Of a stretch of DNA of 64,000 nucleotides, positions 8,213 to 56,842 are shown in pieces. Below the pieces are notes generated by a model, which did not search any database, was not told the DNA's origin, and saw nothing but the letters and a program-made list of their open reading frames with translations. The position numbers and the translations under genes were made by a program. Location of the stretch: the IMG/VR virus record IMGVR_UViG_3300034050_000451, positions 206,866-270,865 of that record; one strand, written 5' to 3'. Numbering within the stretch: position 1 is the first letter of the stretch; each line of letters begins with the position of its first letter.

Positions 8213-8223
8213 TTTTATTTATT

Positions 8224-8291: not shown

Positions 8292-8317
8292 CTTTTTGCC
8301 AATTATTTTTGCTTTTT

Positions 8318-8542: not shown

Positions 8543-8544
8543 AA

Positions 8545-8622: not shown

Positions 8623-8664
8623 CCTTTTTCTAATTATTTTCAATAAAGTTATTAACAATTTGAA

Positions 8665-28973: not shown

Positions 28974-28983
28974 TATTATTTTT

Positions 28984-32582: not shown

Positions 32583-32583
32583 A

Positions 32584-33875: not shown

Positions 33876-33878
33876 AAT

Positions 33879-40150: not shown

Positions 40151-40167
40151 AACTTTTTATTTTCTTC

Positions 40168-42760: not shown

Positions 42761-43210
42761 TTATACGTTTATTTTTAGTTTTTTTATCACTTTTGGGTCT
42801 GTCCCATAGTTTTCAGCCAACTCAATAATTTTTTGTTTACCAGTGTGAGATGCATATAATATCTTTAGATAATCTTCTGCTTCTATCTTTGATACTTCAT
42901 AGTTTTTAGCTACCAAATCTATTAACCATCCCTCATACTTATCAGCACCCTTTGGTTTGATGTATTTCATAAAATGTCTACCCTTTGGGAGTAAATCAAT
43001 TAAAGCCAAATACATTGCTTTAGGTGGTACTTCCTGAAGATATGGTTGAACACTAGCGATAGTTTCTACCCACTCATATTTCATAGATAGAAAACGGAGT
43101 ACCATATAGTTTGACCAGGTCTTACGGTCACTCTCATCCAATGTATCCCAATACTTAGGGTTTTGAACATTGGTTATTTGTGTAATATGGTCAAAAAGGG
43201 TAGCTGCCAT
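42761..43210 (-). CDS. Clamp-loader small subunit (T4 gp62-like)
   Basis: LFD.I..I, YMVLRFLSM, KYIK; synteny with gp44. Confidence 0.7.
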   Translation of the reverse strand: MAATLFDHITQITNVQNPKYWDTLDESDRKTWSNYMVLRFLSMKYEWVETIASVQPYLQEVPPKAMYLALIDLLPKGRHFMKYIKPKGADKYEGWLIDLVAKNYEVSKIEAEDYLKILYASHTGKQKIIELAENYGTDPKVIKKLKINV

Positions 43211-43524
43211 TACTTAGTTTGTTCGTTTGTATTTTGCTTATCTAATTGTTCTAATACTCTCAATTCAGGTGGCATCAATTCCTCACATACTTCACCACAA
43301 TTACCACAAATAAAGATATCAATTGGGATAACTACATCTTGTGGTGTTCCAGTTAGTAACTTTGATATTTTTCTAAACTTACCACCAGTTACAAATGTAT
43401 CGTATCCACATTTTTCACATAAGATTGGTTTAGATTTACCTATATCTATTTTTGGTCCACCAGCTTGCGCTTCAGCTGATGGTTTTTGTGGTTTCCCACT
43501 ATTCATTCCTAATACTTTCGCCAT
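43210..43524 (-). CDS. Zinc-ribbon protein
   Basis: CEKCG...CGNCG. Confidence 0.7.
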   Translation of the reverse strand: MAKVLGMNSGKPQKPSAEAQAGGPKIDIGKSKPILCEKCGYDTFVTGGKFRKISKLLTGTPQDVVIPIDIFICGNCGEVCEELMPPELRVLEQLDKQNTNEQTK

Positions 43525-44471
43525 TATACTAAATTTAAAATTTCAATTAAACACGCTGCCATTGGGATTTCCTTATCAATTGAATTGAAATGGTTACTTT
43601 GCCCTTGTGATAATGCAATAATAACATTTGCTGTGTTAGATGGAGCGTATTCATCTACCTTATCATATAATAATGTAAACAATTCAGTAAAGTCAGTAAC
43701 TCTACTATCAATAATTGTTTGCCTCATATTCATATACTTATTTCTCTTATCATCTTTTGATTTAAGAATATCCAAAACTTTCATTTTGTAATCGTTTTCC
43801 AATAGATTTTTTGTATCTACTTTCAACTCACCTTTTACTGAATTTAATTGACAGGTATTGATAATCTTACGAATATCAGGATACCCAGCATCAATAATTG
43901 GTACCAAATCTTTAACTTCGAATTTTACTCCTTCATTGTTAAGGATTTTACTAACCTGTACTGCAACATCTTTTTTAGTTGGAGGTACAATTTGGAAAGT
44001 TTGGCAACGAGATTGAATCGGGTCAATTACCTTCTCAACATAATTACAAGTCAAAATGAATCTACAATGTCCACTAAACGTTTCCATTAAGTTACGAAGA
44101 ATTGCCTGTGCATTTTGAGTCATATAATCAAACTCATCCAAAATTACAATCTTCCATTTCTTAAAACCCTGTGATGATGCAAAGTTGGTAACTTTATTAC
44201 GAACTGTCTCCACATTGTTTTCAGATGATGCGTTTATAATCATATAATCACATTCAATTGATTTTACAATCAATTTTGCTAATGTAGTTTTACCCGTACC
44301 AGCTCTACCATACAATAAAAGATGTGGTACATCACCAGTTTCTAAATAACCCGCTACCTTTGCTTTAAGGTGTTCGTTACCTACATAATCATCTAATCGA
44401 GTAGGTCTATATGATTCAACCCACAATGAATTATCTACTTTTTCTTCTATACTTTGTTCGAAAAATGCCAT
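43524..44471 (-). CDS. Clamp-loader ATPase subunit (gp44/RFC-like)
   Basis: LWVESYRP, GRAGTGKT, LDEFD, SRC. Confidence 0.95.
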   Translation of the reverse strand: MAFFEQSIEEKVDNSLWVESYRPTRLDDYVGNEHLKAKVAGYLETGDVPHLLLYGRAGTGKTTLAKLIVKSIECDYMIINASSENNVETVRNKVTNFASSQGFKKWKIVILDEFDYMTQNAQAILRNLMETFSGHCRFILTCNYVEKVIDPIQSRCQTFQIVPPTKKDVAVQVSKILNNEGVKFEVKDLVPIIDAGYPDIRKIINTCQLNSVKGELKVDTKNLLENDYKMKVLDILKSKDDKRNKYMNMRQTIIDSRVTDFTELFTLLYDKVDEYAPSNTANVIIALSQGQSNHFNSIDKEIPMAACLIEILNLV

Positions 44472-44487
44472 TTTGTTTTTTTATTTA

Positions 44488-45708
44488 TTATCTACCTACT
44501 TCACTCAATCTCTGAGCCTTAAAATCTTCCCATTCTACACCAATACCATCTATGTAATATAAATGTTCCGGTTTTAATCTACCTTCATCATGCAACTTAG
44601 AATATCTCTTAATTGCCTGTCTTTTCCACCACTTATTAATGTAATCATATCCTTCAGCGAACTTTGGTTTCATTACCAATTCAGATTCTTCAATTTCTGA
44701 ACGTAGGAACTCAGGTCCATTTTCATAAATCATAGCGAGATATACACCTCGTTTAAACCCATGATGATATTCATTTGCTTTAATGTTACATTCTTTGAAT
44801 ATCTGTCCCAAAATCTTTTGTTTAATACCACTTACAGGTCCACTAGCTCCTTCACCAGTACCCATATTAGCCCCATTACGGATTCGTTCGTTTGTGATAG
44901 CAGTTTGATACCACTCTGCACGATTTTCCTTAATCCATTGATGCCAAGGGTCATAGAATTTATCATCCGGCTTTAAACTAATTTTACCAGCTGATTCACC
45001 TAATGTTTTAAAGTGAGGAATTCCATTGTATTGTGAATGTATTCCATAAAGGGAAGTTGTACCAACTGCTATTAGAGTTTGTCCGTACTTCTTTTTCCAA
45101 AATTCCCTAACTTCCGGAACCGTAGTCATCATTGCGGTTAACTTACCCCCTAAGAAGTTGTAACCAAGTGGCTGAGTACATACAATAGATGATGCAATAG
45201 TTGTATAGTTAAGTTTACCTTTAGCAAATTTATCTTCCTTAGTCCAACCAATGTAGTTATCTCTAACACCCATTGCGGTTACATCGGATGCTAATGAAAC
45301 TAATCCTAACAATTTACCACTATTCCTATCTTTTATAAATATCTTCACATTTCGACCAGGATTTGCTGTCCAACTCATTGTGTGAATCATTTTACGAACA
45401 TAAGTCCATTTGGTAGATTGTACTGCATCATCTTCAACAATCTCAACATAAGGGTCTAACTCTTCGATTTCTCTAATAGTTAGTTCCTTATTATTGATAT
45501 CAGTTGGTTTCCATTGAGTATCATATAGAGATGCCATTTGGGATTTATCCCTAAACATAGATTCCTCCTGCAACTCTACCCATTTTTTGTATAAGGTTTG
45601 TTCTTCTACACTCATTGTCATAAGGTAGTTCATATTTTCGATGAGTTTTTGTTTCTCATCTTCAAATACAAATATTGGTTTTTGCGGTTCGGTATCCCAA
45701 AAGCTCAT
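44488..45708 (-). CDS. DUF4338 (DruA-like) protein
   Basis: PGRN, LGGKL.A, TTSLYG..SQYN, G.S.G, H...RGVY. Confidence 0.7.
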   Translation of the reverse strand: MSFWDTEPQKPIFVFEDEKQKLIENMNYLMTMSVEEQTLYKKWVELQEESMFRDKSQMASLYDTQWKPTDINNKELTIREIEELDPYVEIVEDDAVQSTKWTYVRKMIHTMSWTANPGRNVKIFIKDRNSGKLLGLVSLASDVTAMGVRDNYIGWTKEDKFAKGKLNYTTIASSIVCTQPLGYNFLGGKLTAMMTTVPEVREFWKKKYGQTLIAVGTTSLYGIHSQYNGIPHFKTLGESAGKISLKPDDKFYDPWHQWIKENRAEWYQTAITNERIRNGANMGTGEGASGPVSGIKQKILGQIFKECNIKANEYHHGFKRGVYLAMIYENGPEFLRSEIEESELVMKPKFAEGYDYINKWWKRQAIKRYSKLHDEGRLKPEHLYYIDGIGVEWEDFKAQRLSEVGR

Positions 45709-45728
45709 ATGCTACTTTTTAGTTGTTA

Positions 45729-46424
45729 TTATTTAATCTCTACTAAGTAATAATTTGATACATAGTCACCATCGGTAAATGATAACGTTGCCAATCCCTG
45801 TGATGAGATTTGTAATGATGAGGTTGTTGAACCTCTATTAGCCATTAAGATAGCTTTTAGGTATTTTGCTGAGAATGCAATTGCATCCACATTACCTTCA
45901 CATTTACAATCTACACCAATTGAGATTCGGTTAGAGTTTATTGATGAGTATCCTAAGATAATTTCACCTTTACCATCTTTACAAGTGAATGTAAATGTAT
46001 CAGCGTCAGCTAATGCTCCTTTAGATTTGATGAATTTATTAATAAACTCATTATCTAATGTAATATTTACATTGAATGGTGGAAGTGCTTTCAAGTCAGG
46101 TACCGATGGGATAACTGATGGTGCTGCCAACATATACTGAACTTTTGTTCCTTTATCAGAGAACTTCAATGCCCCAGTAACTTCCTCAACAGTGATACCA
46201 TTATCTAATACACTTAACAAACCTCTTAATTGAGATGTGGTGTAAATACCGAACTCACCATTTGGGAATTCCGATTCTACTACACTTACATCACCTAATA
46301 AGGTTTTGTCATCTGAAATCATTCTAACTGATACGCTTGTATCATCTGATTTTAACATTACTGATTCTACTTCACCACCAAGGTTGTAACGATTGATGAA
46401 GCCATCTAATTTTAATTTTTCCAT
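45729..46424 (-). CDS. Sliding clamp (gp45-like)
   Basis: FGIY...L...LS, size and position between clamp loader and polymerase. Confidence 0.8.
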   Translation of the reverse strand: MEKLKLDGFINRYNLGGEVESVMLKSDDTSVSVRMISDDKTLLGDVSVVESEFPNGEFGIYTTSQLRGLLSVLDNGITVEEVTGALKFSDKGTKVQYMLAAPSVIPSVPDLKALPPFNVNITLDNEFINKFIKSKGALADADTFTFTCKDGKGEIILGYSSINSNRISIGVDCKCEGNVDAIAFSAKYLKAILMANRGSTTSSLQISSQGLATLSFTDGDYVSNYYLVEIK

Positions 46425-46488
46425 AATTTAATTTTAAGTTTTACTTTTTTGTTATACAAATATACGAATTATTTTCCACATTTCCAAA

Positions 46489-49005
46489 TTAAAATGCAAA
46501 AAACTTTTCTGCTGTTTTGGTTGAGGATAAAACCTCTCCCCAATTTAATGCTCCATAGAAATCTTCCAATTTCTTAAGGAGTTCCCTTTCAAAGATTTTA
46601 TCATAATCAATGTAGGTAGTTACTAAGTCCATAATTTCTTTTGGGTCACTATAACCATTTAATCCAACTGCATCTAATCCAAATGGGTTTTGTTTAAGAT
46701 ATACCCATTTAATTTTATCACCATCTTTTAATGGTGCAAATTGATTTTCTAAACCAAAATGAATTAATAGTTGATTATATGCAATAGATGCTTTAACGTG
46801 TGCTGGGCAACCTGATGGGAATTGAAACATTGCCGTTTGTTGTTTCTTCTTTGGCATGTACTTTGTTAAGTTTTTAACTGCTCCGGCTTTAGCAATCTTA
46901 ACAACATCCATATTAACCAATTCTTTTTTGAAATTATAAACTTTATCAGTTATTTGGGTTTCCGTATCACCTCTAAGAATTTCAATTAATATTTCTCCCA
47001 TAAACTTACGGAAAGCCGCTGGGTATGATGACCTAACCACATCTAATCCCTTTACATCCAATCTATCACAAGGTACACCATTATCGGAAATAATCCATTG
47101 TGCGTATCTCTTTTTAGCAATCCAAATACCAGCTTTTGATACGAATTCCTTTTTAATTTCAAATCTATGCTTATCAATGTTGAATACCCTTTTACCTAAG
47201 ATATCATAGAAGTCATTTAGGTAATTCTGCATCTCACCAGCTATATCATTTACATAACCAGCAATTACATCCTGCTCATCATTTTTCCAATTTGGAATTC
47301 GATGGTCTAAAAGAGGAACTGCGGAGAAAAATACCGAATCAGTATCAATATATATATTACTGTCAGCATCAGGAGTGCCAAGCTCCTTATTGTATTTGAT
47401 GTTAGCCATATCAGCTGTGCTTTTAATAACTGTCTGTCCCGTAGTGGTAACAGCGGTAGCATTATCAACATCATAGAACCTAAAGGCAGGAAGACCAAGC
47501 ACCCCATATAAAGAGTTAAGTAAAATTTTCTGAACCAGCTGGCGTTTTTTATAGAATGCGTACTTTTCTTTATCTCCCTCATCACCATATTTTTTTTCTA
47601 ATTTTCTAAATTCAACCCTTTGAGAGAACCATAAGTCCAATATATCAGGAATACAACCCGGTGTATCCGTTCTATACATAACACCATTTGATGCTACGGA
47701 ATATTTACTTTTCTCTAATAGAATTTTTAGATTTTCTTTTGTTATGTAATTATCACCAACTTTATACTCATTAACTTCACCTTTTAAGTATTTTTGTGCA
47801 TCCCAATCTTCCAACTTACCAACTTTGGTTTCTGGTGAGATATTGATACTCATAATGATTGATGGATATAGGGAAGTTAAATCCAAATCATAAATCCAAT
47901 CATATTTTCCAACAATAGGTGCTTTAACATATGCTCCAATGAATTTCTCTTCATTATTTTCCTTAAGAGCTTCCATTCTCTCTCTTCTATCAGCAGGTTT
48001 GTTAGGTGCTACAATGTTCTTTCTTTTAAGATAACATAATAATGCTCCTTCCAAATACTTTGATGAATATACGAAATCTTCATATGGAACGTGTCCTGCG
48101 TGGCAGATACCTCTAGCGGTATCTATGAATTGTAGTTTCTTATCAAAATCAACAACTAACTCAACATCGACTAAGTTATACTCAATAAACTTTTCAATAT
48201 CATCTCTGAATAAGATATCTAAGTTTCCTTCATATTCAATCTTACCCCTACCCAATTCTCTTTGAGCAATGGTATCTAATCTATATGAATCTAATTCTGA
48301 ATATGTGAAGTTTTTATAAAGTGAAAGGTAATCCAAATAAGATACACCTGCCATAAAATACCTTTTACGATATGGTGACCAAAAACACTGTCCAATTGGT
48401 GATAATCTATTTGCATGTCTTTCACCCAATAAACGTTTGATACGATTATATAACATTGGTGTATCGAAATAATCAATATTCCAACCAGTTACAATAGATG
48501 GATTTATATACTCATACAATTCCAAATATTTCATTAACATATCTTCTTCATGTGTAAACGGAATAACGATAGCTTTATCAGTTTTACGCTCTACCATTTG
48601 ACCTTTTTTATCCATTACTAATACCCAATATTGGTTAGTAGCAGAATCATGCAGTGCAATTGATGTTAATTCATTCTCTGCTTTTTCTGGGTCAGGTAAT
48701 CCACTCTCCATCTCACACTCAATATCATATGTAAGTGTAACGTGTCCTTCAGATGGAATATCCGAATTGGTGTACATATCTACTAAAACTCTCGTAGTTT
48801 CAGGTACATCTGATTCAAATAGTGTAGGGTCATCTCCTTTGAATTTATAAATCTTAGTCACCTTATCTCCATATAGAGTGGTGTACTCACCATTTACTGC
48901 TTTTTCATAAGCATATCGGGTATATGGAAAACTCCTATACCCTTGAGTATCATCCCACAAATGGACTAAGTTCTTTTCTCTTTGATAATATATGTTTGAA
49001 TACAA
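46489..49005 (-). CDS. Family B DNA polymerase (TTG start)
   Basis: DIE, GWN..FD exo motifs; DLTSLYPS, KILLNSLYG, YIDTDS, KKRY. Confidence 0.97.
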   Translation of the reverse strand: MYSNIYYQREKNLVHLWDDTQGYRSFPYTRYAYEKAVNGEYTTLYGDKVTKIYKFKGDDPTLFESDVPETTRVLVDMYTNSDIPSEGHVTLTYDIECEMESGLPDPEKAENELTSIALHDSATNQYWVLVMDKKGQMVERKTDKAIVIPFTHEEDMLMKYLELYEYINPSIVTGWNIDYFDTPMLYNRIKRLLGERHANRLSPIGQCFWSPYRKRYFMAGVSYLDYLSLYKNFTYSELDSYRLDTIAQRELGRGKIEYEGNLDILFRDDIEKFIEYNLVDVELVVDFDKKLQFIDTARGICHAGHVPYEDFVYSSKYLEGALLCYLKRKNIVAPNKPADRRERMEALKENNEEKFIGAYVKAPIVGKYDWIYDLDLTSLYPSIIMSINISPETKVGKLEDWDAQKYLKGEVNEYKVGDNYITKENLKILLEKSKYSVASNGVMYRTDTPGCIPDILDLWFSQRVEFRKLEKKYGDEGDKEKYAFYKKRQLVQKILLNSLYGVLGLPAFRFYDVDNATAVTTTGQTVIKSTADMANIKYNKELGTPDADSNIYIDTDSVFFSAVPLLDHRIPNWKNDEQDVIAGYVNDIAGEMQNYLNDFYDILGKRVFNIDKHRFEIKKEFVSKAGIWIAKKRYAQWIISDNGVPCDRLDVKGLDVVRSSYPAAFRKFMGEILIEILRGDTETQITDKVYNFKKELVNMDVVKIAKAGAVKNLTKYMPKKKQQTAMFQFPSGCPAHVKASIAYNQLLIHFGLENQFAPLKDGDKIKWVYLKQNPFGLDAVGLNGYSDPKEIMDLVTTYIDYDKIFERELLKKLEDFYGALNWGEVLSSTKTAEKFFAF

Positions 49006-49047
49006 ATTTCTTTTATTTAATTGTTCTACAAATATACGATAATTTTT

Positions 49048-50169
49048 TTACTTATCAAAAGTATTTCTCGCATTATTTACGAAGTTTTCTTCGATTTTCC
49101 AACTTTTAAGTTGAGATTCCCATAATAGTGATTGAGCAATGTGAGTTATATCAGGTCTTTCAATTTCACCATCTAATAATTTAACAACCATTTCTTTAAA
49201 TTCTTTTTTTCCATTGTAAAGAAGTGGGTATTCGTTACCAACCATTTCAGGGTAACAAAAATCATTAGGTAGTAAATAAGGTACACCTCTACTTAACCCA
49301 TCAGTTGCACTCATACTCCATGCTGAATAACCTTGAAACGTTCCTACACCAAAATGAGCTTCTGCTAATTGATTCATATAAACATTCCTATCAGCATGTC
49401 CAATATATTTGGTATATGGTTTATTCATATTGTTTAAGGAAGTCCAAACTTCAAAATCTTGTCTTTCTTTCCATAGGTTATCCATAGTTTCAAAAAACCA
49501 ATCTGAACCTGTATATACACCTTCTCTATGATTAAACACAATAGTTTTTGGTTTATATGTTTGAGTTGGTGTTGCTGAATCGCATCCTAAATACCAAGGT
49601 TGAATAATCTCTTCTAACTTATCAGTAATATGCGATTTAAATGTTTCTTTTGCTCTTTTAATAACCAAATCTTTAACCCATTGTGAGTTTACACCACAAA
49701 CCTTCATTTGTAACATGCCTTTCACATTTCTCCAAAATGAATTATCATCTCTAGCACCATTATCTTTAATTTCCCACCAATGACAATAACCAATAATAGG
49801 TTGTGTTTTATTGTAAATACGAGTAATTTTAAACTCATTAGTCCATTCAGGTAAATGTGACCAAATTAGATTAAATTCACCATTATATTTTTCAATAATT
49901 CGGTTGAAGAAATTATTGGGATAATCTACTCTCATTTTTGGTGGAAAACAATCCAATCCATCCATTTTAACCAACTTAACATTGGGATATTCAAATTGAT
50001 TGATTATACCAGGGTGGTTATTTAAATCTGGGTATGGGAGAATCCATTCCCATTCTTTTCCTATTTCGGTGTTGTCTAAAAATGACTTAAACACCAATAG
50101 GAACGAATCCCTATTGATGTCTTTTGCCATACCAAAATTTGTGTAATTAGGTATTACTAATACTCTCAT
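49048..50169 (-). CDS. GT-B glycosyltransferase adjacent to polymerase (candidate DNA glycosyltransferase)
   Basis: YCHWWE, FNHR, WSMSATDG...GVP, YPEMV. Confidence 0.65.
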   Translation of the reverse strand: MRVLVIPNYTNFGMAKDINRDSFLLVFKSFLDNTEIGKEWEWILPYPDLNNHPGIINQFEYPNVKLVKMDGLDCFPPKMRVDYPNNFFNRIIEKYNGEFNLIWSHLPEWTNEFKITRIYNKTQPIIGYCHWWEIKDNGARDDNSFWRNVKGMLQMKVCGVNSQWVKDLVIKRAKETFKSHITDKLEEIIQPWYLGCDSATPTQTYKPKTIVFNHREGVYTGSDWFFETMDNLWKERQDFEVWTSLNNMNKPYTKYIGHADRNVYMNQLAEAHFGVGTFQGYSAWSMSATDGLSRGVPYLLPNDFCYPEMVGNEYPLLYNGKKEFKEMVVKLLDGEIERPDITHIAQSLLWESQLKSWKIEENFVNNARNTFDK

Positions 50170-50174
50170 CCATT

Positions 50175-51698
50175 TTATTTTAAAATTGCTTTATTTGATT
50201 TTCTGATATTTGATGTTTTATTTCTGATTACTAAATTTTGTATAGTAGTTTCATTACCACTTGCTCTAGCATCAATATGGTCACCTTCCATAATTGAATT
50301 AGTACCCATTAGTTGCTCAAATGTGAACTCATTCCCATCAGCATCAATCCAATCATTTTGAATTGCTGCGTTTAATTTTTGTTTTTTAGTATAGTTTGTA
50401 GTATCAATTAAAGTAATAACACCACTAGCGAAAAGTTTATCATAACTTTTATAAAACTTTTCCATAATCATAGTAGAACGAATTTGTATATCATCCGTTT
50501 TCTTAGCTCCACATTTTCTTTTAAATGATTCGGCGTTTGTTGATTTCTTACCAGTAATAGGATGTACATAATCTTTTCCAGTTGCCGGGTCTATAAGGAA
50601 TTCATCTTCCTTTCTCAAAGTTGCTTCAGTTTTTGCAAACCAATCGATAAACTTTTTATAACTATTAATTTTTATCTCCTTATCTTTATTATTCATTGGG
50701 TGAGATGGAGTATTCAATACCGTCATTAATATAAATAAGTTATCTAAGAATGTTCTTTCAAATTTAACATCTCCGGCTGAATTTGCTAATTCTATCGATT
50801 TACTGATTAATGATTTAGTATCATTCATTCTCTTTTTACTATGTTTTGGTAATCCTTCAATTGAAGCCATAGTATCTAACATAGAATTCTTTGGCCAACT
50901 ATATATGTTACCCTCCAATACGTTGTAATAATATGCAAACCATTCAGCTATTATAAGTGCATCACCCTTTTTCAAAAGAGAGTAATCGCTTGATAGATTC
51001 TTTGTATTATTAAACATTGCTGTTAATAATGGGTTATTATTCATAAATGAATGTAGGAATCTATTGAATTGAGATGGTATGATAATTCTTCGTTCATTAT
51101 CATTCCAAGGTTCTCCGATATTGGTATAGATTGTAATATCAACCATATCCTGCAAAGTTGCTTTTTCAACTAATACAATTGTAATTGGTAAATCCAATAC
51201 TTGCTTTTGAGTAAGTTCCGGCATATCTTTGAAATATATACCTTTCATTTCAAATGGTATTGTATTACCATCTTTACTTTCGATTAAATCAATTACTGAT
51301 TCTGTAATTGTAAATTTGGAATTTAAATAGTCAGAATAACATTCCACTCTATGTTGACCATCTATATTTAGATAACGATATCCTAACTTTGTTAGGTTTT
51401 GTAAGTAATCAATTGTTTCTTTAACAGATTCATATCTGTCATCTCCTTCAGAATATTGAGATATCAATGATTCACAATAGTCTAAACATCCATCAATACT
51501 TACTAATACAATTGTGTAGATATTTGAGTGTCCAATTAAACACGCTTTCATATGTTTTGCTGATGTTGTATCCTCCCACTTATCAAGCAATCTTTGTAAT
51601 TGATGCTTATCCACATAAATATAAGGGGACATTTCTCTTAGTTTGTTTAGAGTTCCACCAGAAAGAACTTTTGCGCTAATTGATTTTTTAATAGCCAT
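50175..51698 (-). CDS. DUF262 (ParB-like) + C-terminal HNH protein, GmrSD/SspE-like architecture
   Basis: LQR...W, IDGQHR, TNIGEPW; EGDHI...G..T..NL...N..KS. Confidence 0.7.
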   Translation of the reverse strand: MAIKKSISAKVLSGGTLNKLREMSPYIYVDKHQLQRLLDKWEDTTSAKHMKACLIGHSNIYTIVLVSIDGCLDYCESLISQYSEGDDRYESVKETIDYLQNLTKLGYRYLNIDGQHRVECYSDYLNSKFTITESVIDLIESKDGNTIPFEMKGIYFKDMPELTQKQVLDLPITIVLVEKATLQDMVDITIYTNIGEPWNDNERRIIIPSQFNRFLHSFMNNNPLLTAMFNNTKNLSSDYSLLKKGDALIIAEWFAYYYNVLEGNIYSWPKNSMLDTMASIEGLPKHSKKRMNDTKSLISKSIELANSAGDVKFERTFLDNLFILMTVLNTPSHPMNNKDKEIKINSYKKFIDWFAKTEATLRKEDEFLIDPATGKDYVHPITGKKSTNAESFKRKCGAKKTDDIQIRSTMIMEKFYKSYDKLFASGVITLIDTTNYTKKQKLNAAIQNDWIDADGNEFTFEQLMGTNSIMEGDHIDARASGNETTIQNLVIRNKTSNIRKSNKAILK

Positions 51699-51716
51699 AA
51701 TAATTTAATTTTTTTT

Positions 51717-51788
51717 GGTATCGTTGTTGTGGTGATACCTTTACCACATTGTTTATTTTGAACTCATATAAGGGTGAGTTCTTACCCT
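51717..51788 (-). promoter_or_regulatory. Two tandem H-type RNA pseudoknots in the 5' UTR of the DUF262-HNH gene
   Basis: AGGGT-AA-GAACTC-ACCCT-TATAT-GAGTTC and TGTGGT-AAA-GGTATC-ACCACA-ACAAC-GATACC; all pairs Watson-Crick. Confidence 0.75.
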
Positions 51789-51800
51789 ATCTTTATAACA

Positions 51801-51832
51801 CTAAGATACGAATTATAATTCATATAGCAAAA
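51801..51832 (-). promoter_or_regulatory. Class I promoter driving the pseudoknot leader
   Basis: TTTG-N19-TATCTTAG. Confidence 0.6.
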
Positions 51833-51880
51833 TGTTTTTTAATTATTTTATAACTAATTGATTATCAATAAGTTAGTATT

Positions 51881-52684
51881 TTACCAAAAATTGATGTCAT
51901 TACTCTCTTCTGGTGCGTATGTAGTGTGATGTACTACTTCGGTATTATAATCGTTTAAATCCTTTGGATATGGCTGTATTGGATGTTTTAATCTACCCAT
52001 CAAGTCCTTTCTCTCCTTCTTATTTTGGGGTAATATTTGAATATACCTATGTTTTGGTGGTTCTTCTCTTCTCCAAAACTCCTTATATCCATCCTTTCCA
52101 ATTTCCTTTCTAAGATGCTCCAAATTACCACTTCCCCAGTTATTATAAACTGTCCTACTATGAATCCAATCGAATGGGTCATTAATTAATGAAATTCCCC
52201 AATTTGGCATCAATGCAATATCAGTATTTAATCCCTGATAAATCCAATTGGTAGCTTTGTATATCCCACCAACGTGTCCTTGTCCATTATTAGCGTATGA
52301 TAGTAATACTTTAATATTAGTATCATTTTCTCTAATCCATTGGAATGTTTTACCTAATGCACAACTTTCAATATTTGAACCATATCCATCATCAACATAC
52401 AAACGGGTAAGTTCTAAGATGTTATCTTTTGTTAACCCATCACATACCGATGTTGGTGCTTTGGCTCCAACAGGGAACCCATAAACTGCTACTCCAACTA
52501 ATTTGTTATCTGAAAACCCAACTGATGTTTCATCTTCTCTATAATAGATACCCAATGCGTATCTACATGCTGTCCAAGCATGAGTGTAGTGTTTTTTAAC
52601 AATCATATCTTTAGCGATAGATTTAGCAATAGGAGCTACACTTACTCTACTGGCATCAACATAATGTTTACCTTCTTCTTTCAT
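51881..52684 (-). CDS. Mom-like GNAT DNA-modification protein, copy 1
   Basis: HY, LVGVAVYG, LELTRL, IES, SYA...GHVGGIYKATNWIYQG, KHRY. Confidence 0.8.
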   Translation of the reverse strand: MKEEGKHYVDASRVSVAPIAKSIAKDMIVKKHYTHAWTACRYALGIYYREDETSVGFSDNKLVGVAVYGFPVGAKAPTSVCDGLTKDNILELTRLYVDDGYGSNIESCALGKTFQWIRENDTNIKVLLSYANNGQGHVGGIYKATNWIYQGLNTDIALMPNWGISLINDPFDWIHSRTVYNNWGSGNLEHLRKEIGKDGYKEFWRREEPPKHRYIQILPQNKKERKDLMGRLKHPIQPYPKDLNDYNTEVVHHTTYAPEESNDINFW

Positions 52685-52685
52685 T

Positions 52686-52838
52686 TTACTTTACCCACTC
52701 ATTAAATGCGTTTTCAAATGCGGTTACCTTATCCACTCCTTCAGATTGATATTGTTTTGCAGTTTCTATTACTTCAAAACGTAAACCAAATGCGGATGCC
52801 TCCATTAAGATTTCTTCAATTTGCTCCTCTGCTGTCAT
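52686..52838 (-). CDS. Small acidic protein (50 aa)
   Basis: Hand translation MTAEEQIEEILMEASAFGLRFEV...NEWVK. Confidence 0.55.
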   Translation of the reverse strand: MTAEEQIEEILMEASAFGLRFEVIETAKQYQSEGVDKVTAFENAFNEWVK

Positions 52839-52840
52839 AA

Positions 52841-53044
52841 CTAATTTAATTTGATTGTTGTATTAATATAATGCTCTCTTACTTTGTTTAACCACACCTT
52901 ATCTTTTGGGTGGTAATGACCTGAACGTAATGTGAAATCAACTAATTGTTGATGTGGATAATCTCCACCAATAGTCTTTATAAGTTTCAAAAGTTCCCTT
53001 AACTCATTTGTTAGTGGAAAAAACTTTATAGGTTTCCTAGCCAT
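52841..53044 (-). CDS. Small hypothetical protein
   Basis: ORF track; promoter at 53062. Confidence 0.55.
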   Translation of the reverse strand: MARKPIKFFPLTNELRELLKLIKTIGGDYPHQQLVDFTLRSGHYHPKDKVWLNKVREHYINTTIKLN

Positions 53045-53074
53045 ATATTTAATTTATAAAACAAATATACGAAA

Positions 53075-53842
53075 TTAATTTGATATTTCCAAATTAATCG
53101 GTTCCATTTTTGTAATTTGTTCTATAAATTCCTCATTTTCCTTTGGATATGGGAATAATGGGTGCTTTATGGTTTTCATAAGTTTCCTACGTTCGCCACC
53201 TTTTGAGAGAATATACACATATCTATGTTTTCTTGGGTTCTTTCGTATCCAAAACGTAGATGATGCTATCTTTTGGATTTCAGTTGGATTGTTAGTTCCA
53301 AATTTGACATAAGATGTTCGTTGGTGGTGCCAATCACCATCTTCTTCCCATCGAAAATCCCAACTATCGTTAAATCTTAGTTTGTTACCCTGATACAACC
53401 AATTTGTGGCTTGATATATAGTACCACAATGTCCTTCTTTCGGGTCTGAATATGATATTAGTGCTTTAATGTTTGGTACATTTTCTCTTAACCAATCAAA
53501 TGTTTGAGATAGGAACCAACTTTCAATATTAGAACCATAACCATCAAATACAAATAATCGAGTTAATTCTAATACCTCATCCCGTTCTAATAGGGGTGTA
53601 ATTGATTGCCCAGCACTTCTACCTATTGGGTCACCATAACAAGCAACTCCAATTAATTTATCTTCTACATTACTAAAGAATGTATGCTCTTCTACTTCAG
53701 AGGTAAATAAACCAATAGCATAGGATACTTTAGTCCACAAACCACTATAATGATTGTTTACTATAATATCCTTTGCTACCGATTTGGTTATTAATCTAAT
53801 TGATAGCTTTGAAGTATCGCAATATTGTTTGTTTTCTTTCAT
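53075..53842 (-). CDS. Mom-like GNAT DNA-modification protein, copy 2
   Basis: HYS, LIGVACYG, LELTRL, IES, SYSD..EGHCGTIYQATNWLYQG, KHRY. Confidence 0.8.
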   Translation of the reverse strand: MKENKQYCDTSKLSIRLITKSVAKDIIVNNHYSGLWTKVSYAIGLFTSEVEEHTFFSNVEDKLIGVACYGDPIGRSAGQSITPLLERDEVLELTRLFVFDGYGSNIESWFLSQTFDWLRENVPNIKALISYSDPKEGHCGTIYQATNWLYQGNKLRFNDSWDFRWEEDGDWHHQRTSYVKFGTNNPTEIQKIASSTFWIRKNPRKHRYVYILSKGGERRKLMKTIKHPLFPYPKENEEFIEQITKMEPINLEISN

Positions 53843-54042
53843 AAACTACCAGTCCAAAATTCATTTAAGTGTGTCCATGTCTCATTTCTCACAATTCTTA
53901 GAATATTGGCTGAGGAACATTTGTTGTTTTGAGCAATTACTCTAACATTTCGGTGTCCCATTTTCCATAACCTTCTTATTTGTATAACCTGCTCATCTGT
54001 CAATTTTGATGACGGGTGAGACTGACCTCTTAGTATTGGCAT
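53839..54042 (-). CDS. Stand-alone HTH resembling the C-terminal DNA-binding domain of phage HNH endonucleases
   Basis: RG..HP.SKLTDEQV..IR...I..I.RN.TW.HL. Confidence 0.6.
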   Translation of the reverse strand: MPILRGQSHPSSKLTDEQVIQIRRLWKMGHRNVRVIAQNNKCSSANILRIVRNETWTHLNEFWTGSL

Positions 54043-54051
54043 TTTTTTATA

Positions 54052-54315
54052 TTAATTTTTCCATTCATTAATTGCGTTTGTATATGCCATTTCAGATTGA
54101 ACTCCAGAAAATCGTTGTACTTCTTTTCCGTTTTTTTCAATAACCACTAATGGAATACTACGAACTGAGTATTGAGATGCTGCCTCAAAATCTTTATCAA
54201 CATCAATATCTCTAAAAGTAACATCACTATGTTGTTCTTTTAATCGTTCAATCGTTGGTGTTAACATTTTACACGGTCCACACCAAGTTCCATAAAATTT
54301 CTTTACTTCTAACAT
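54052..54315 (-). CDS. trxA: Thioredoxin
   Basis: WCGPCK, VRSIP. Confidence 0.93.
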   Translation of the reverse strand: MLEVKKFYGTWCGPCKMLTPTIERLKEQHSDVTFRDIDVDKDFEAASQYSVRSIPLVVIEKNGKEVQRFSGVQSEMAYTNAINEWKN

Positions 54316-54340
54316 CTTCTTTTTGTTTTAATTGTTTATT

Positions 54341-56122
54341 CTATCCATCACAACTCAAGCAATCAATATCCATTGCTCTATCAGCAATATCACCTCTGAG
54401 TACTGATTCAGTTCTCATATAATAAAGTGTTTTAACACCTTGCTTCCATGCTTCCATACTTACAGTATGTATCCATTTTGGTGTTGCGGTAGATGGGAAT
54501 GCCAAATTTAATGAAACCGCTTGGTCAATATACTGCTGTCTAATTCCAGCTTGTCTAACCAATTCTAATTGATTTATTTCTTTGAATGTTTTAAATACAT
54601 CCTTAATATTAAATGATTTTTCGTAATCTAATTCAGATATATCTTCTTTCTTTAATACTTTACCATTTAAGAATCTCCATTCATTCAATTCATTAATATC
54701 CTGAATTGAACCTCCATCTGCCATAATTTTATCCCAAATTTCTTTTGTATTGATTCCTATTTTTTTAAAAACCCTTTCCAATTCACCATTCTTACGAATA
54801 AAAGTTCCTTTAGCAGTTTGTTCCGTAAATACGTTAGCTGCCCAAGGTTCAATACCAGCAGATACATCACCACTCAATTTAGAGTTTGATACCGTTGGTG
54901 CAATTGCTCTTAAGTGTGTATTTCTAAACCCACTATCTCTACACCATAAAGGTTCACCCAATTCAACTGCCATATCTCTACTTGCTCTTTCAGATTCAAT
55001 CTTTAATTGAGAGAAAATCTTACGAGTTTCAAATTGTGCAATCATTCCTTCAAATGGAATACCCCTTTGTTGTAAATAAGTGTGCCATCCTAATACACCT
55101 AATCCCAATGCTCTACCTTTTTCAGCAGAACGAACTGAGTTTTCAAATCCTTTTAAGTTTTTAGCTTTTTGGATAAATTCTGAAAGAACTCCATCTAAAA
55201 ACCAAGTTGCGGTATATACTAAATCAGTATCTTTCCACTCATCGTACTTAGCTAAGTTTAAAGATGATAAACAACATACAAATGAATGTGATTCATCAGT
55301 ATGAAGAGCGATTTCAGAACATATGTTTGTCATATGAACTTTCAATCCATTAACTTTGTACATCTCTGGGTTTTGTTTATTAACATTACCCTTAAACATA
55401 ATATAAGGTTCTCCAGTTGCTTTACGTTTCTGAAGTAATTTACCCCATTTTCTACGAGCTTCTTCATCTCCGTTTTCCAACTTTCTCATAAACTTATCAC
55501 CTACTACTGCACATTGGTGTAGGTTAAGTGATTGGCGATTTACATCACCTTTTGGTTCTCTAATCTCTAACCAATCTTCAAAATCTTTATGGTCAATGTT
55601 TAGGTTAACAGATGCTGCTCCCCTACGAACTGAACCCTGATTTGTGGCAAGTATGGTTGAATCATAGATTTTTGTAAATGGAATTACACCATCAGATGTT
55701 CCATTTCCAGTAATTTGTGCTCCAGCTGGTCTAATTTGATTAATACCAATTCCAACCCCACCACCATGTTTTGCTAATAACATTAGTTCTAAATTCTTAG
55801 TACCAATATCAAATATTGAATCAGCTACATCAATTCCGAAACAAGATATAGGTAAACCCCTATCAGTTCCAGTGTTTGATAAAACAGGTGTAGCCAAGTT
55901 TAACCAACCTTTCCAAATGTAATCAAAAAACTTTGATGCCAATTGTGGTTTGTTTAATCGTTGTGCTACTTTAGTAGAAACTCTCCAATATGCATCTTTT
56001 GGTTTCTCTCCAGCTAGCAAATACCCTTTACTAATAGTTTTTACATAGATTTCGGTATTTCCCCATTCTGGAAAATCTACTCCCAATTCCCAACCTAAAT
56101 CTTCTCCGTAATTTTTAGCCAT
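54341..56122 (-). CDS. nrdA: Class I ribonucleotide reductase alpha subunit (no ATP cone)
   Basis: ATP, ISCF, GGGVG, TNICSEI, APTVS, KTLYY, C-terminal CLSC. Confidence 0.95.
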   Translation of the reverse strand: MAKNYGEDLGWELGVDFPEWGNTEIYVKTISKGYLLAGEKPKDAYWRVSTKVAQRLNKPQLASKFFDYIWKGWLNLATPVLSNTGTDRGLPISCFGIDVADSIFDIGTKNLELMLLAKHGGGVGIGINQIRPAGAQITGNGTSDGVIPFTKIYDSTILATNQGSVRRGAASVNLNIDHKDFEDWLEIREPKGDVNRQSLNLHQCAVVGDKFMRKLENGDEEARRKWGKLLQKRKATGEPYIMFKGNVNKQNPEMYKVNGLKVHMTNICSEIALHTDESHSFVCCLSSLNLAKYDEWKDTDLVYTATWFLDGVLSEFIQKAKNLKGFENSVRSAEKGRALGLGVLGWHTYLQQRGIPFEGMIAQFETRKIFSQLKIESERASRDMAVELGEPLWCRDSGFRNTHLRAIAPTVSNSKLSGDVSAGIEPWAANVFTEQTAKGTFIRKNGELERVFKKIGINTKEIWDKIMADGGSIQDINELNEWRFLNGKVLKKEDISELDYEKSFNIKDVFKTFKEINQLELVRQAGIRQQYIDQAVSLNLAFPSTATPKWIHTVSMEAWKQGVKTLYYMRTESVLRGDIADRAMDIDCLSCDG

Positions 56123-56123
56123 T

Positions 56124-56432
56124 TTAATTCTCTTCTTTTATGAAAACACCATTAACAGTATTTCCTTTTCTATTCTTAATTTCATTCCAAGCATGCTCTA
56201 AACATTCAGCTGGTTCTAATCCCAACTGATATGCTAATATGATTAATGTTACAAATGTATCACCAATCCCATCTTGGATTTCTTCTGTTTTTTTGTTCTT
56301 TGCGATTGCTCCAGCGGTTTCACCCAACTCTTCCATCACTTTCATCAATTGTTTGGGTGCGTTTTCTGCTTTTAGGATATCCTTAGCATCAGCCCATCCT
56401 TTTACGTTTTGTATTAATTCATCAAAATTCAT
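56124..56432 (-). CDS. MazG-like nucleotide pyrophosphohydrolase
   Basis: K..EELGE, D.IGD, AWNEIKNRKG. Confidence 0.85.
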   Translation of the reverse strand: MNFDELIQNVKGWADAKDILKAENAPKQLMKVMEELGETAGAIAKNKKTEEIQDGIGDTFVTLIILAYQLGLEPAECLEHAWNEIKNRKGNTVNGVFIKEEN

Positions 56433-56842
56433 AATATTGTGCTATCTAAATCGTAGGTTCCGAATAATTCTTCACCTGCTTTAATGTGTGTAATTGCTAT
56501 TTTATTTTGAGTGTTGAAGTTAGCCCTTTCAACACCTAATGTGTTTGTATATGCCAATGGATTTACTAAATTAAAATATCCATCATTATATAATTTAAAC
56601 CATACAAAGGGGTATTCACCCCTTTTATTTTCGTATGATTTAAGTATTATGCGTTTAACATATATTGGTAGTTGTTCAAATTCTAAATGGGTTATTGTAT
56701 ATGTTCCAGTTTCCCCATCCCATCTTTCAAATAATGATTCACCGGCTTTGATATCTCTAAGAGCAAATGTACCAATTCCATGTATTGGGCTTGGTGCAAT
56801 ATCAGTTTTGATGCAATTATTTAAATATGTGAATGTACTCAT
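56429..56842 (-). CDS. SET-domain protein
   Basis: SPIHGIGTFALRDIKAGE ... IKAGEELFGTY; NHS motif appears as YTNT. Confidence 0.8.
   Translation of the reverse strand: MSTFTYLNNCIKTDIAPSPIHGIGTFALRDIKAGESLFERWDGETGTYTITHLEFEQLPIYVKRIILKSYENKRGEYPFVWFKLYNDGYFNLVNPLAYTNTLGVERANFNTQNKIAITHIKAGEELFGTYDLDSTIL

What the first reader, a model, noticed from the sequence alone, without database searches (positions are those of the whole stretch)
44488..53842. Candidate multi-enzyme DNA hypermodification system interleaved with the replisome genes
Seen (by coordinate): clamp loader, DUF4338, clamp, PolB, GT-B glycosyltransferase, DUF262-HNH, Mom-like 1, two small ORFs, Mom-like 2. Established: phage Mu Mom is a GNAT-fold enzyme that modifies adenine; T-even phages glycosylate DNA bases; GmrSD-type DUF262/HNH enzymes read DNA modifications. 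Inference: several writers (two Mom-like GNATs, a glycosyltransferase, perhaps DUF4338) plus a reader nuclease, all embedded among replication genes, point to a replication-coupled base modification of unknown chemistry. No hydroxymethylase, TET/JBP or methyltransferase is visible in this window.
Basis: partly seen in the sequence, partly recalled or inferred. Interest (0 to 1): 0.75.

Follow-up and report, generated by a model that had tools for sequence, protein, structure and literature searches.

The report
Mom-pair DNA modification module in cyanophage replisome
A large freshwater cyanophage carries two Mu-Mom-type DNA-adenine modifying enzymes, a glycosyltransferase and a swappable nuclease gene inside its DNA-replication gene block. 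This is a new variant of a known anti-restriction strategy, not yet a demonstrated new DNA chemistry.

Summary
The two Mom-like proteins are clear Mom-family members with the catalytic residues intact. The 373-aa protein has a GT4-like GT-B fold. The 507-aa protein has a DUF262/ParB-like N-terminus plus an HNH nuclease domain. DUF4338/DruA is a GNAT domain.

The genes do not behave as one pathway. In 80 related viral contigs the MomA–MomB pair, the GT-B and the DruA-like gene are nearly always present. The nuclease, however, sits in a hypervariable slot between MomB and the GT. That slot is empty, or holds unrelated genes, in close relatives, and the nuclease gene has been exchanged laterally.

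The DruA-like GNAT also lies in the clamp/clamp-loader cluster of cultured cyanomyoviruses that have no Mom. Homologues of the GT-B (48% identical) sit in small phages beside packaging or structural genes. The genome's only thymidylate-synthase homologue is canonical, and no TGT or TET/JBP was found.

Best reading: aminoacyl-tRNA-dependent adenine modification by a conserved Mom pair, with MomB possibly tethered to the sliding clamp. Added to this are a GT of unknown acceptor and an accessory GmrSD-like nuclease cassette. No chemistry was shown here. I rate it a new variant of a known kind, of moderate interest.

The parts
53839..54042 (-). 67-aa ORF whose end overlaps the MomA start by 4 nt. 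Small DNA-binding-like protein and possible regulator of the Mom genes.
   Evidence: Found directly upstream of MomA in nearly all related loci at 53-100% identity. Weak match to the C-terminal DNA-binding part of an HNH-endonuclease PHROG (E 0.001). No Pfam hit. Not a homologue of Mu Com, since it has no Cys motifs.
53075..53842 (-).
   Evidence: PF25680 1.5e-44 and phrog_1384 6e-51. Hits the Mu Mom crystal structure 8bv8 at 2.6e-11. H58, Y59, R111, S124, D149, Y159 and W181 (Mu numbering) are all conserved. Present in 57 of 59 related loci.
52841..53044 (-). 67-aa ORF between the two Mom genes, function unknown.
   Evidence: No family hit. Detected only in near-identical genomes.
52686..52838 (-). 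50-aa ORF immediately upstream of MomB, function unknown.
   Evidence: No family hit. Kept at 44-60% identity in nearer relatives.
51881..52684 (-). Possible sliding-clamp partner.
   Evidence: PF25680 5.5e-44. Hits 8bv8 at 1.3e-5. H58, Y59, R111, S124, Y159 and W181 are conserved, but D149 is N in this clade. It forms its own orthogroup, 45% identical to MomA. Present in 58 of 59 loci. All 49 distinct orthologues end in an aromatic residue plus W (48 FW, 1 YW). Clamp-trimer complex score 0.61 against a best control of 0.00.
50175..51698 (-). 507-aa DUF262/ParB-like (DGQHR) plus HNH nuclease: a GmrSD-like accessory cassette in a hypervariable slot.
   Evidence: Model pLDDT 80. Fold matches. 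Invariant residues D113-G-Q-H-R117, D473, H474, N488 and N497. Patchy distribution and roughly 86% nt identity to locus L085, against 55-75% in the flanks.
49048..50169 (-). 373-aa GT4-like GT-B glycosyltransferase, acceptor unknown.
   Evidence: Model pLDDT 87. PDB matches 7qsg, 3c4q, 3mbo and 5ze7 at TM 0.65-0.71. Swiss-Prot GT4 enzymes, including tRNA-queuosine mannosyltransferase. 422 homologues, none annotated. Always adjacent to PolB or DruA in this lineage.
46489..49005 (-). Family B DNA polymerase (gp43-like) with a C-terminal K-F-F-x-F tail.
   Evidence: PF00136, PF03104 and phrog_262 at 9e-184. 50.5% identical to Microcystis phage Mel-JY01 PolB. C-terminal tail seen in 41 of 43 orthologues.
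45729..46424 (-). Sliding clamp (gp45-like).
   Evidence: phrog_223 1.3e-13. Conserved position between PolB and the clamp loader. Trimer pLDDT 89.
44488..45708 (-). DruA/DUF4338-domain protein (406 aa): GNAT-fold enzyme of unknown substrate, a long-standing resident of the clamp/clamp-loader cluster.
   Evidence: PF14236 3e-19, phrog_19197 1.7e-30 and PADLOC DruA. DUF4338 is called a GNAT in PMC10853773. Present in 62 of 62 loci. The same PHROG lies between gp44 and gp62 in S-CAM9.
43524..44471 (-). Clamp loader large subunit (gp44-like).
   Evidence: phrog_168 3.8e-78 and PF00004/PF13177.
42761..43210 (-). Clamp loader small subunit (gp62-like).
   Evidence: PF16790 1.1e-5, score just below the family's cut-off. 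Position conserved in relatives.

Best explanation
The stretch is the replication gene block of a T4-like freshwater cyanophage. The genome is 270.9 kb and the window holds cpeT. The block carries separate add-ons rather than one obligatory pathway.

(1) A conserved pair of anciently diverged Mom-family GNATs, MomA and MomB.
- By homology to Mu Mom, they are inferred to transfer an aminoacyl group from a charged tRNA to N6 of adenine in double-stranded phage DNA after replication. This would shield the DNA from restriction.
- The phage supplies tRNAs for all 20 amino acids.
- MomB is probably recruited by the sliding clamp, so modification would follow the fork.
- The two paralogues either have different sequence or donor specificities or act as a heterodimer. 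This is inference.

(2) A GT4-like GT-B glycosyltransferase co-inherited with the Mom pair in this lineage. Its acceptor is unresolved: a DNA adduct, or a protein or glycan.

(3) A GmrSD-like DUF262-HNH nuclease in a hypervariable slot between MomB and the GT.
- It is dispensable and laterally exchanged.
- It is most likely an exclusion or restriction nuclease against host or competitor DNA, to which the phage's own modified DNA would be immune. It could also be partly selfish.

(4) The DruA-like GNAT between clamp and clamp loader is an older feature of marine T4-like phages and is not specific to this module.

Shown here: gene identities, folds, conserved residues, synteny, slot variability and lateral exchange. 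Inferred: every substrate and all chemistry.
For: Mom identity and active-site conservation:
- Shown: - The Mu Mom mechanism and its essential residues come from PMC13219725.

Two orthogroups are kept as an adjacent pair across lineages down to about 55% PolB identity, even where the pair has been relocated.

Co-occurrence in 80 IMG/VR loci:
- MomA 57 of 59.
- MomB 58 of 59.
- DruA 62 of 62.

The nearest cultured relative, Mel-JY01, has the same replisome order but no Mom. Searches of cultured-phage genomes with the GT-B and DruA-like proteins gave no match to it either.

The slot:
- The MomB-GT gap ranges from 6 bp to 3.8 kb.
- Occupants include the 507-aa family, a GmrSD_N-type 495-aa protein and an unrelated 586-676-aa family.
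- The nuclease is 92% aa and roughly 86% nt identical to that in L085, whose flanking genes are 56-70% identical. In closer relatives it is only 63% identical.

Clamp link:
- Complex score 0.61 against a best control of 0.00. That mark was reached by 51 of 78 solved complexes and 2 of 108 mismatched pairs.
- MomB ends in an aromatic residue plus W in 49 of 49 orthologues (48 FW, 1 YW); PolB ends in FFxF in 41 of 43.

Other points:
- tRNAs for all 20 amino acids.
- DruA-like gene without Mom in S-CAM9 and in Pelagibacter phage Mosig.
- cpeT in the window.
Against: - No direct evidence that the DNA is modified. Only assembled contigs of the source runs are available.
- All synteny comes from one phage lineage, so co-occurrence may reflect descent rather than function.
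- MomB of this clade has N at the position of Mu D149, a residue whose alanine mutant is strongly impaired (PMC13219725).
- The predicted MomB-clamp interface uses MomB residues 17-23, 45, 54-62 and 120, not the FW tail. The job, a trimer plus a partner, is unlike the tool's calibration set.
- My profile comparisons did not establish a link between the long DruA-like protein and Mom. Only a short DruA paralogue matched Mom, at E 2e-5 and probability 77%.
- The nuclease's target is unknown.
Confidence: 0.55

Rival explanations
1. One integrated, replication-coupled multi-enzyme pathway: MomA, MomB and/or the DruA-like GNAT install an acyl or aminoacyl handle on a base, the GT-B glycosylates that handle, and the DUF262-HNH enzyme reads the product.
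For: - The Mom pair, GT-B and DruA are retained together despite rearrangements. The order GT-DruA-PolB occurs in one clade and GT-PolB-clamp-DruA in the other, and MomB abuts the GT with a 6-bp gap in several loci.
- The GT-B's best PDB matches (7qsg, 3c4q, 3mbo, 5ze7) are the same ones reported for proven or predicted phage DNA glycosyltransferases (Table 1 of PMC13326640).
- A GT4 enzyme is known to glycosylate a modified base in tRNA.
- MomB-clamp binding is supported by a complex prediction.
Against: - The nuclease is dispensable and swapped between phages.
- DruA-like genes occur without Mom in S-CAM9 and Mosig, and the GT-B search found no match in any cultured phage.
- GT-B homologues occur without Mom, DruA or PolB nearby.
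- The known Mom product, carbamoylmethyl-adenine, offers no hydroxyl for glycosylation (PMC13219725).
Confidence: 0.2
2. Only the Mom pair acts on DNA. The GT-B glycosylates a protein or glycan, for example virion proteins or the products of the neighbouring sugar island. The DruA-like GNAT acetylates a protein or small molecule. Their position among replisome genes reflects shared early expression and descent.
For: - The best non-self viral structural matches are Arthrobacter-phage glycosyltransferases (E 2e-18).
- 48%-identical homologues lie next to portal, protease, sulfotransferase and terminase genes in small phages.
- A 14-kb sugar-nucleotide and glycosyltransferase island lies directly downstream, at 27735-41559. 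A comparable glycosyltransferase cluster is present in Mel-JY01, which lacks Mom.
- There is no hydroxylated-pyrimidine route in the genome.
Against: - The GT-B is separated from the sugar island by the replisome genes.
- Within this lineage it stays beside the Mom pair and PolB, not beside structural genes.
- In one small phage the homologue sits three genes from two DNA methyltransferases, a context that is ambiguous.
Confidence: 0.3
3. The 507-aa HNH protein is a purely selfish homing-type endonuclease that spreads between related phages at this site and has no functional relation to DNA modification.
For: - Incongruent phylogeny and a sharp rise in identity at the gene boundaries.
- The slot can be empty.
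- It has an HNH domain.
- Other homing-endonuclease-type domains occur in this genome and its relatives: I-TevI DNA-binding domains and a split PolB in some relatives.
Against: - The full-length architecture is DUF262/GmrSD_N plus HNH, as in type IV restriction enzymes, not that of typical homing endonucleases.
- The same slot holds a second, distantly related GmrSD_N-HNH protein in another relative. That pattern suggests diversifying selection for a function.
- The family is well conserved, with mean column identity 68% and invariant catalytic residues.
Confidence: 0.2
4. The Mom paralogues do not modify DNA. Instead they act on RNA, tRNA or proteins, like other aminoacyl-tRNA-using or tRNA-acetylating GNATs.
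For: - GNATs of this kind have diverse substrates (PMC13219725, discussion).
- MomB carries D149N.
Against: - Strong Mom-family profile scores.
- The residues needed for DNA momylation are conserved, as is W181 within the Mom-specific insertion.
- Homologues picked from metagenomes were active on DNA in PMC13219725.
Confidence: 0.07

Closest known systems
Phage Mu Mom (6-NcmdA, 'momylation'; PDB 8bv8)
   Same: Same Pfam family, with a direct sequence hit to the crystal structure. H58, Y59, R111, S124, Y159 and W181 are conserved, and the Mom-specific insertion region is present. A small ORF overlaps the start of the first Mom gene, as com overlaps mom in Mu.
   Different: - Two anciently diverged paralogues (45% identical) are kept as a pair.
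- They sit in an early/replication block rather than at the genome end.
- The upstream ORF is not a Com zinc finger.
- MomB has a conserved FW tail and, in this clade, D149N.
- Only 23-29% identical to Mu Mom.
- Donor amino acid and target motif are unknown.
GmrSD / BrxU / SspE (DUF262-HNH or DUF262-DUF1524 type IV, modification-sensing nucleases)
   Same: A ParB/DUF262-like N-terminal domain with a DGQxR motif, a helical middle region and a C-terminal His-Me/HNH nuclease. Full-length structural matches.
   Different: - No hit to the GmrSD_N profile.
- The motif is DGQHR, as in DndB-type proteins.
- It is encoded by a phage, in a hypervariable slot beside modification genes.
- Its specificity is untested.
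Phage DNA glycosyltransferases of the GT4-like class (RB69/DLP3 arabinosyltransferases, RL38JI glucosyltransferase; PMC13326640) and T4 alpha/beta-glucosyltransferases
   Same: GT-B fold with the same best PDB neighbours: 7qsg, 3c4q/3c4v, 3mbo and 5ze7.
   Different: - Those systems start from 5-hydroxy- or 5-hydroxymethyl-cytosine made by a variant ThyA homologue.
- Here the only ThyA homologue keeps L143, C146, D169 and N177 and is 53% identical to E. coli ThyA.
- There is no sequence-level similarity to any cultured-phage protein.
Mom-nuclease couplings predicted in jumbo phages (Iyer et al. 2021, PMC7824862)
   Same: A Mom-type writer next to an endonuclease, read as a phage-borne restriction-modification-like pair.
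   Different: - There the Mom domain is fused to REase-fold nucleases.
- Here the nuclease is a separate DUF262-HNH gene that is dispensable and exchanged between phages.
DruA of type I Druantia, and phrog_19197 of T4-like cyanophages and pelagiphages
   Same: PF14236/DUF4338 domain, a GNAT according to PMC10853773. Same PHROG as S-CAM9 gp115, which also lies inside the clamp-loader cluster.
   Different: - No DruB-E partners flank it. The neighbours are the clamp and the clamp loader.
- 27-31% identical to the versions in cultured phages.

Membership tests
Mom family (PF25680) | Profile match above the curated cut-off | tested here: met
   150.7 and 152.5 bits against a cut-off of 27.1. These are the only two copies in the genome.
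Mom family (PF25680) | Residues needed for Mu Mom activity: H58, Y59, R111, S124, D149, R151, Y159, W181 | tested here: inconclusive
   H58, Y59, R111, S124, Y159 and W181 are conserved in both paralogues. D149 is kept in MomA but is N in MomB of this clade. Position R151 is K in MomA and G in MomB, and is variable across the whole family.
Mom family (PF25680) | Aminoacyl-tRNA-dependent modification of N6-adenine in dsDNA | not testable with these tools
   Needs expression followed by nucleoside LC-MS. Only assembled contigs of the source runs are held.
GmrSD-type type IV restriction enzymes | N-terminal DUF262/GmrSD_N profile match with a DGQQR motif | tested here: not met
   No PF03235 hit for the protein or anywhere in the genome at E <= 0.1. 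The motif is DGQHR. The fold does match DUF262 proteins.
GmrSD-type type IV restriction enzymes | C-terminal His-Me/HNH nuclease domain with catalytic residues | tested here: met
   Residues 436-507 superpose on Cas9 HNH domains at Z 6-7 and rmsd about 2.2 A. D473, H474, N488 and N497 are invariant in 25 sequences.
GmrSD-type type IV restriction enzymes | Cleavage dependent on DNA modification | not testable with these tools
   Biochemical assay needed.
DndB/DpdB-type DGQHR ParB-like proteins | DGQHR motif plus family profile, in an operon with dnd or dpd genes | tested here: not met
   The motif is present, but no NCBIfam DGQHR or DndB model hit at E <= 0.1. No TGT/DpdA in the genome. The neighbours are Mom and a glycosyltransferase.
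GT-B / GT4 glycosyltransferases | Two-Rossmann-domain GT-B fold | tested here: met
   TM 0.65-0.71 to MshA, BshA and 7qsg, at probability 1.00.
GT-B / GT4 glycosyltransferases | Glycos_transf_1 sequence profile | tested here: not met
   No Pfam, NCBIfam, PHROG or PADLOC hit.
T-even-type glycosylated hydroxy(methyl)pyrimidine systems | Variant ThyA homologue (N177D, L143D/E or D169N) that makes the hydroxylated precursor | tested here: not met
   The genome has a single ThyA homologue, and it keeps L143, C146, D169 and N177. The diagnostic residues are taken from PMC13326640.
Druantia type I defence system | DruA together with DruB-DruE in one operon | tested here: not met
   The DruA domain is present, but the flanking genes are the clamp and the clamp loader. 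It is a phage gene of phrog_19197.

The most novel reading that the evidence does not exclude
A hypermodification not yet described: clamp-tethered Mom paralogues put an aminoacyl-derived handle on adenine right behind the replication fork. The donor would be an amino acid other than glycine, for example one with a hydroxyl. The co-inherited GT4-like enzyme then glycosylates that handle. The result would be a glyco-aminoacyl purine made without any hydroxymethyl-pyrimidine precursor, in an abundant group of freshwater and marine cyanophages.
Probability: 0.13. Interest if true: 0.85.

Novelty: new variant of a known kind. Interest (0 to 1): 0.55.

Why it matters
Mom-type adenine modification has been worked out only for phage Mu. 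Here a conserved pair of Mom paralogues is built into the replisome block of an abundant, uncultured lineage of aquatic phages. One DruA-like orthologue (85% identical) alone was seen on 293 contigs.

If the pair is active, three questions become testable:
- whether Mom relatives use other aminoacyl-tRNAs;
- whether modification can be coupled to the sliding clamp;
- whether a purine adduct can be glycosylated.

The hypervariable nuclease slot next to the writers is a compact natural example of how phages swap restriction-like genes, presumably under the cover of their own DNA modification. Such modifications would also bias restriction-based and nanopore-based viromics of lakes and oceans.

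Tried and rejected
- Megablast of the region against cultured phages, and tblastn of the GT-B and the nuclease: no match.
- Sequence searches of both orphan proteins against PDB chains: chance-level hits only.
- Profile-profile comparison of the long DruA-like family with the Mom family: no significant match, whether the DruA alignment was shallow or broader. Only a 192-aa DruA paralogue from a relative matched Mom (E 2e-5, probability 77%, 40 columns). The claim that DruA is Mom-related therefore rests mainly on PMC10853773 and on Atlas clusters that carry both Pfam families.
- The 586-676-aa family that most often fills the slot: no lead from Pfam, PHROG, a PDB profile search, hhalign against the nuclease family, or the Atlas.
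- Promoter and terminator scan of 43000-55000: fewer promoter-like sites than in shuffles, and no informative terminators on the coding strand.
- Sequencing runs: the phage is in many lake-water metagenomes, but only as assembled contigs. No signal about modification can be read.
- A T-even-like, deazaguanine or TET/JBP route was considered and rejected. ThyA is canonical and there is no TGT. There is no Tet_JBP hit either, though that control was uninformative.
- Mu Com-like regulation was considered. The upstream ORF has no zinc-finger cysteines.

Full report
**What the window is**

The window is bases 206866-270865 of a 270,865-bp viral record that CheckV rates as complete. GC content is about 32%, and essentially all genes lie on the minus strand.

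From high to low coordinates the genes are:
- gp32, UvsX/RecA, RNase H and a DnaB-type helicase;
- nrdB, a weak SET-like ORF, a MazG-like ORF, nrdA and thioredoxin;
- the genes of the finding;
- the clamp loader subunits and a PD-(D/E)XK nuclease;
- a 14-kb sugar-nucleotide and glycosyltransferase island.

Further evidence on the source:
- A cpeT phycobiliprotein-lyase gene lies at 11312-11998.
- The nearest cultured PolB belongs to Microcystis phage Mel-JY01, at 50.5% identity.
- The same DNA occurs at about 100% identity in many lake-water metagenomes.
- Relatives are common in Tara and other marine assemblies.

So this is a T4-like cyanophage of an uncultured, abundant lineage.

- The clamp loader, DruA/DUF4338, clamp, PolB and both Mom-like genes are supported by strong profile matches.
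- The 373-aa protein hits no sequence family. Its model, built from a 34-sequence alignment (pLDDT 87), is a GT4-like GT-B glycosyltransferase, with TM 0.71 to 7qsg and 0.70 to MshA.
- The 507-aa protein also hits no family. It has DGQHR at residue 113 and an invariant DH...N...N at its C-terminus.
- Its model (pLDDT 80) matches DUF262/GmrSD_N-HNH proteins over the full length. The C-terminal 70 residues superpose on Cas9 HNH domains.
There is an FkbM-type domain in the sugar island and a weak SET-like ORF. A DNA N6/N4 methyltransferase fused to an I-TevI DNA-binding domain lies just outside the window.

**The Mom pair**

Both proteins hit the Mu Mom crystal structure directly.

I aligned 46 sequences, including Mu Mom. 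H58, Y59, R111 and Y159 are invariant, and S124 and D149 are nearly so. Both window proteins keep H58, Y59, R111, S124, Y159 and W181.

MomB of this clade has N at D149. MomB orthologues in more distant relatives keep D.

The two genes define two orthogroups:
- 64-89% identity within each group;
- about 45% identity between the groups.

They stay adjacent across lineages whose PolB is only 51-59% identical, and also in a lineage where the pair has moved about 13 kb away.

Mu Mom is now known to transfer glycine from Gly-tRNA to N6 of adenine in dsDNA after replication. The adduct then rearranges on the base. Mu Mom works as a dimer (PMC13219725).

The phage genome encodes 25 tRNAs covering all 20 amino acids, plus a tmRNA.

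I infer that MomA and MomB modify adenine in phage DNA using charged tRNA. I cannot tell whether they differ in donor, differ in target motif, or form a heterodimer.

**A link to the replisome**

- All 49 distinct MomB orthologues end in an acidic stretch followed by an aromatic residue plus W: x-F-W in 48 and N-Y-W in one.
- Among 150 Mom-family representatives, only members of the MomB orthogroup end this way.
- PolB of the same phages ends in K/Q-F-F-x-F in 41 of 43 cases. From my own knowledge, this resembles the clamp-binding tail of T4/RB69 polymerases.
- A complex prediction of the clamp trimer with MomB scored 0.61, against 0.00 for the best of three controls. That mark was reached by 51 of 78 solved complexes and 2 of 108 mismatched pairs, and the job differs from the tool's calibration set.
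- The predicted interface uses clamp residues 103-115, 207-211 and 226-229. On MomB it uses residues 17-23, 45, 54-62 and 120, not the FW tail.

This is suggestive support for replication-coupled modification, and no more than that.

**The nuclease is an accessory cassette**

I examined 80 IMG/VR loci found with the GT-B family.
- The gap between MomB and the GT ranges from 6 bp to 3.8 kb.
- The slot is empty in several loci.
- It holds the 507-aa family in some loci.
- It holds a distantly related DGQQR GmrSD_N-HNH protein of 495 aa in one close relative.
- Most often it holds an unrelated 586-676-aa family of unknown function.

The nuclease tree disagrees with the backbone tree:
- In locus L085 the nuclease is 92% identical in protein to the window's copy. 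Its nucleotide identity is 78-91% per 150-bp block, roughly 86% overall.
- In the same locus MomB is 70% identical, the GT 56% and PolB 59%. Identity steps up at the gene boundaries.
- In relatives whose PolB is 84-89% identical, the nuclease is only 63-64% identical.

The 'reader' is therefore dispensable and laterally exchanged.

Two GmrSD-like families share one slot beside the writers. This fits an exclusion or restriction role for which the phage's own modification gives immunity, as proposed for Mom-nuclease fusions in jumbo phages (PMC7824862). A partly selfish, homing-like behaviour is not excluded.

**DruA-like GNAT**

- DUF4338 is described as a GNAT domain in PMC10853773.
- Atlas clusters of DruA-domain proteins include members that also hit the Mom profile, and viral DruA-ParB fusions exist.
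- A 192-aa DruA paralogue lies immediately upstream of the Mom pair in one relative. It aligns to the Mom profile over the G-x-I-Y-Q-A-T-N-W region (E 2e-5, probability 77%).
- The long form did not give a significant match.
- The gene is present in 62 of 62 loci.
- The same PHROG also occurs in cultured cyanomyoviruses and pelagiphages. In S-CAM9 it sits between gp44 and gp62. Neither S-CAM9 nor Pelagibacter phage Mosig has a Mom gene.

It is thus an old, replisome-linked GNAT of marine T4-like phages with an unknown substrate. It is not a specific part of this module.

**The glycosyltransferase**

Within this lineage it always lies next to PolB or DruA and downstream of the Mom pair. Mel-JY01 has the same thioredoxin-PolB-clamp-clamp loader order without it.

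Its best PDB neighbours are the same ones reported for proven or predicted phage DNA glycosyltransferases (PMC13326640). GT4 enzymes can glycosylate a modified base in tRNA.

Against a DNA role:
- The closest non-self viral structures are Arthrobacter-phage glycosyltransferases.
- 48%-identical homologues sit in small phages near portal, protease, sulfotransferase or terminase genes, without Mom, DruA or PolB.
- The genome has no route to a hydroxylated pyrimidine. Its single ThyA homologue keeps L143, C146, D169 and N177 (diagnostic residues from PMC13326640).
- No TGT is present.

The acceptor stays open.

**Verdict**

The picture of a single multi-enzyme pathway with a dedicated reader is not supported.

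The best-supported description has four parts:
- a conserved two-Mom adenine-modification module, possibly tethered to the clamp;
- a co-inherited GT-B of unknown acceptor;
- a swappable GmrSD-like nuclease cassette;
- an older DruA-like GNAT, with all four interleaved in a T4-like cyanophage replisome block.

I rate this a new variant of a known kind. Nothing about the chemistry was shown here. Expression followed by nucleoside mass spectrometry would settle it.

Noticed in passing
G000:C1:179964-186124 (outside the window): A cluster of 25 tRNA genes covering all 20 amino acids, plus a tmRNA. This is of interest because Mom enzymes use charged tRNA as the donor.
   Followed up: partly
window 11312-11998 (-): A CpeT/CpcT phycobiliprotein-lyase gene (PF06206, 9e-22). 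It marks the virus as a cyanophage.
   Followed up: no
window 27735-41559 (-): A 14-kb sugar island holding GT2 (three copies), GT4 and a GT-like 431-aa protein, UDP-GlcNAc 2-epimerase, a DegT aminotransferase fragment (208 aa), a GNAT, an FkbM methyltransferase and a HAD-nucleotidyltransferase fusion. Its start, with the GT4, GT2 and epimerase genes, is conserved in relatives, and Mel-JY01, which lacks Mom, has a comparable glycosyltransferase cluster at the same position. Its target is unknown.
   Followed up: partly
window 56429-56842 (-): A 137-aa ORF between nrdB and a MazG-like gene, with a weak SET-domain match (E 1.4e-4, score about at the family's cut-off).
   Followed up: no
G000:C1:204670-206025 and about 206588-207187 (locus L097): A 451-aa DNA N6/N4 methyltransferase fused to an I-TevI-type DNA-binding domain lies just before the window start. 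A 199-aa non-specific DNA/RNA endonuclease straddles the window start.
   Followed up: partly
L001:1495-2598 (G000:C1, about 199.7-200.8 kb): The thymidylate synthase is canonical in its active site. It carries two insertions, of about 55 and 37 residues, relative to E. coli ThyA.
   Followed up: partly
L011, L012 and L013, positions about 6399-9115: In close relatives PolB is called as two ORFs (589 + 312 aa), separated by a few bases. In other loci the PolB-clamp distance grows by about 1.7 kb (L053-L058). These may be splits or inserted elements in PolB.
   Followed up: no
L011:3207-5012, L003:8023-9999 and 25 other slot ORFs (alignment A6): A diverse 586-676-aa protein family is the commonest occupant of the MomB-GT slot. 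No search gave any lead to its function.
   Followed up: yes
L014:6630-7208; L040 and L041 at about 5103; L060, L061 and L088 between PolB and the clamp: A short (192-aa) DruA-domain protein appears either directly upstream of MomA or between PolB and the clamp in some relatives. Extra Mom copies occur in L005 (198 aa, after the helicase), L033 and L079. The replisome block seems to be a hot spot for Mom-type GNAT genes.
   Followed up: partly
window 7004-8212 and 8665-10782 (-): A MoxR/CbbQ-type AAA ATPase next to a 705-aa protein with weak VWA/CobT-like matches. An ATP-dependent DNA ligase lies at 5505-6599.
   Followed up: no
window 46489-46503 (PolB C-terminus) and 51881-51889 (MomB C-terminus): PolB ends in K-F-F-A-F and MomB in N-F-W. 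Both tails are conserved across the lineage, which suggests a shared docking site on the clamp or another hub protein.
   Followed up: partly
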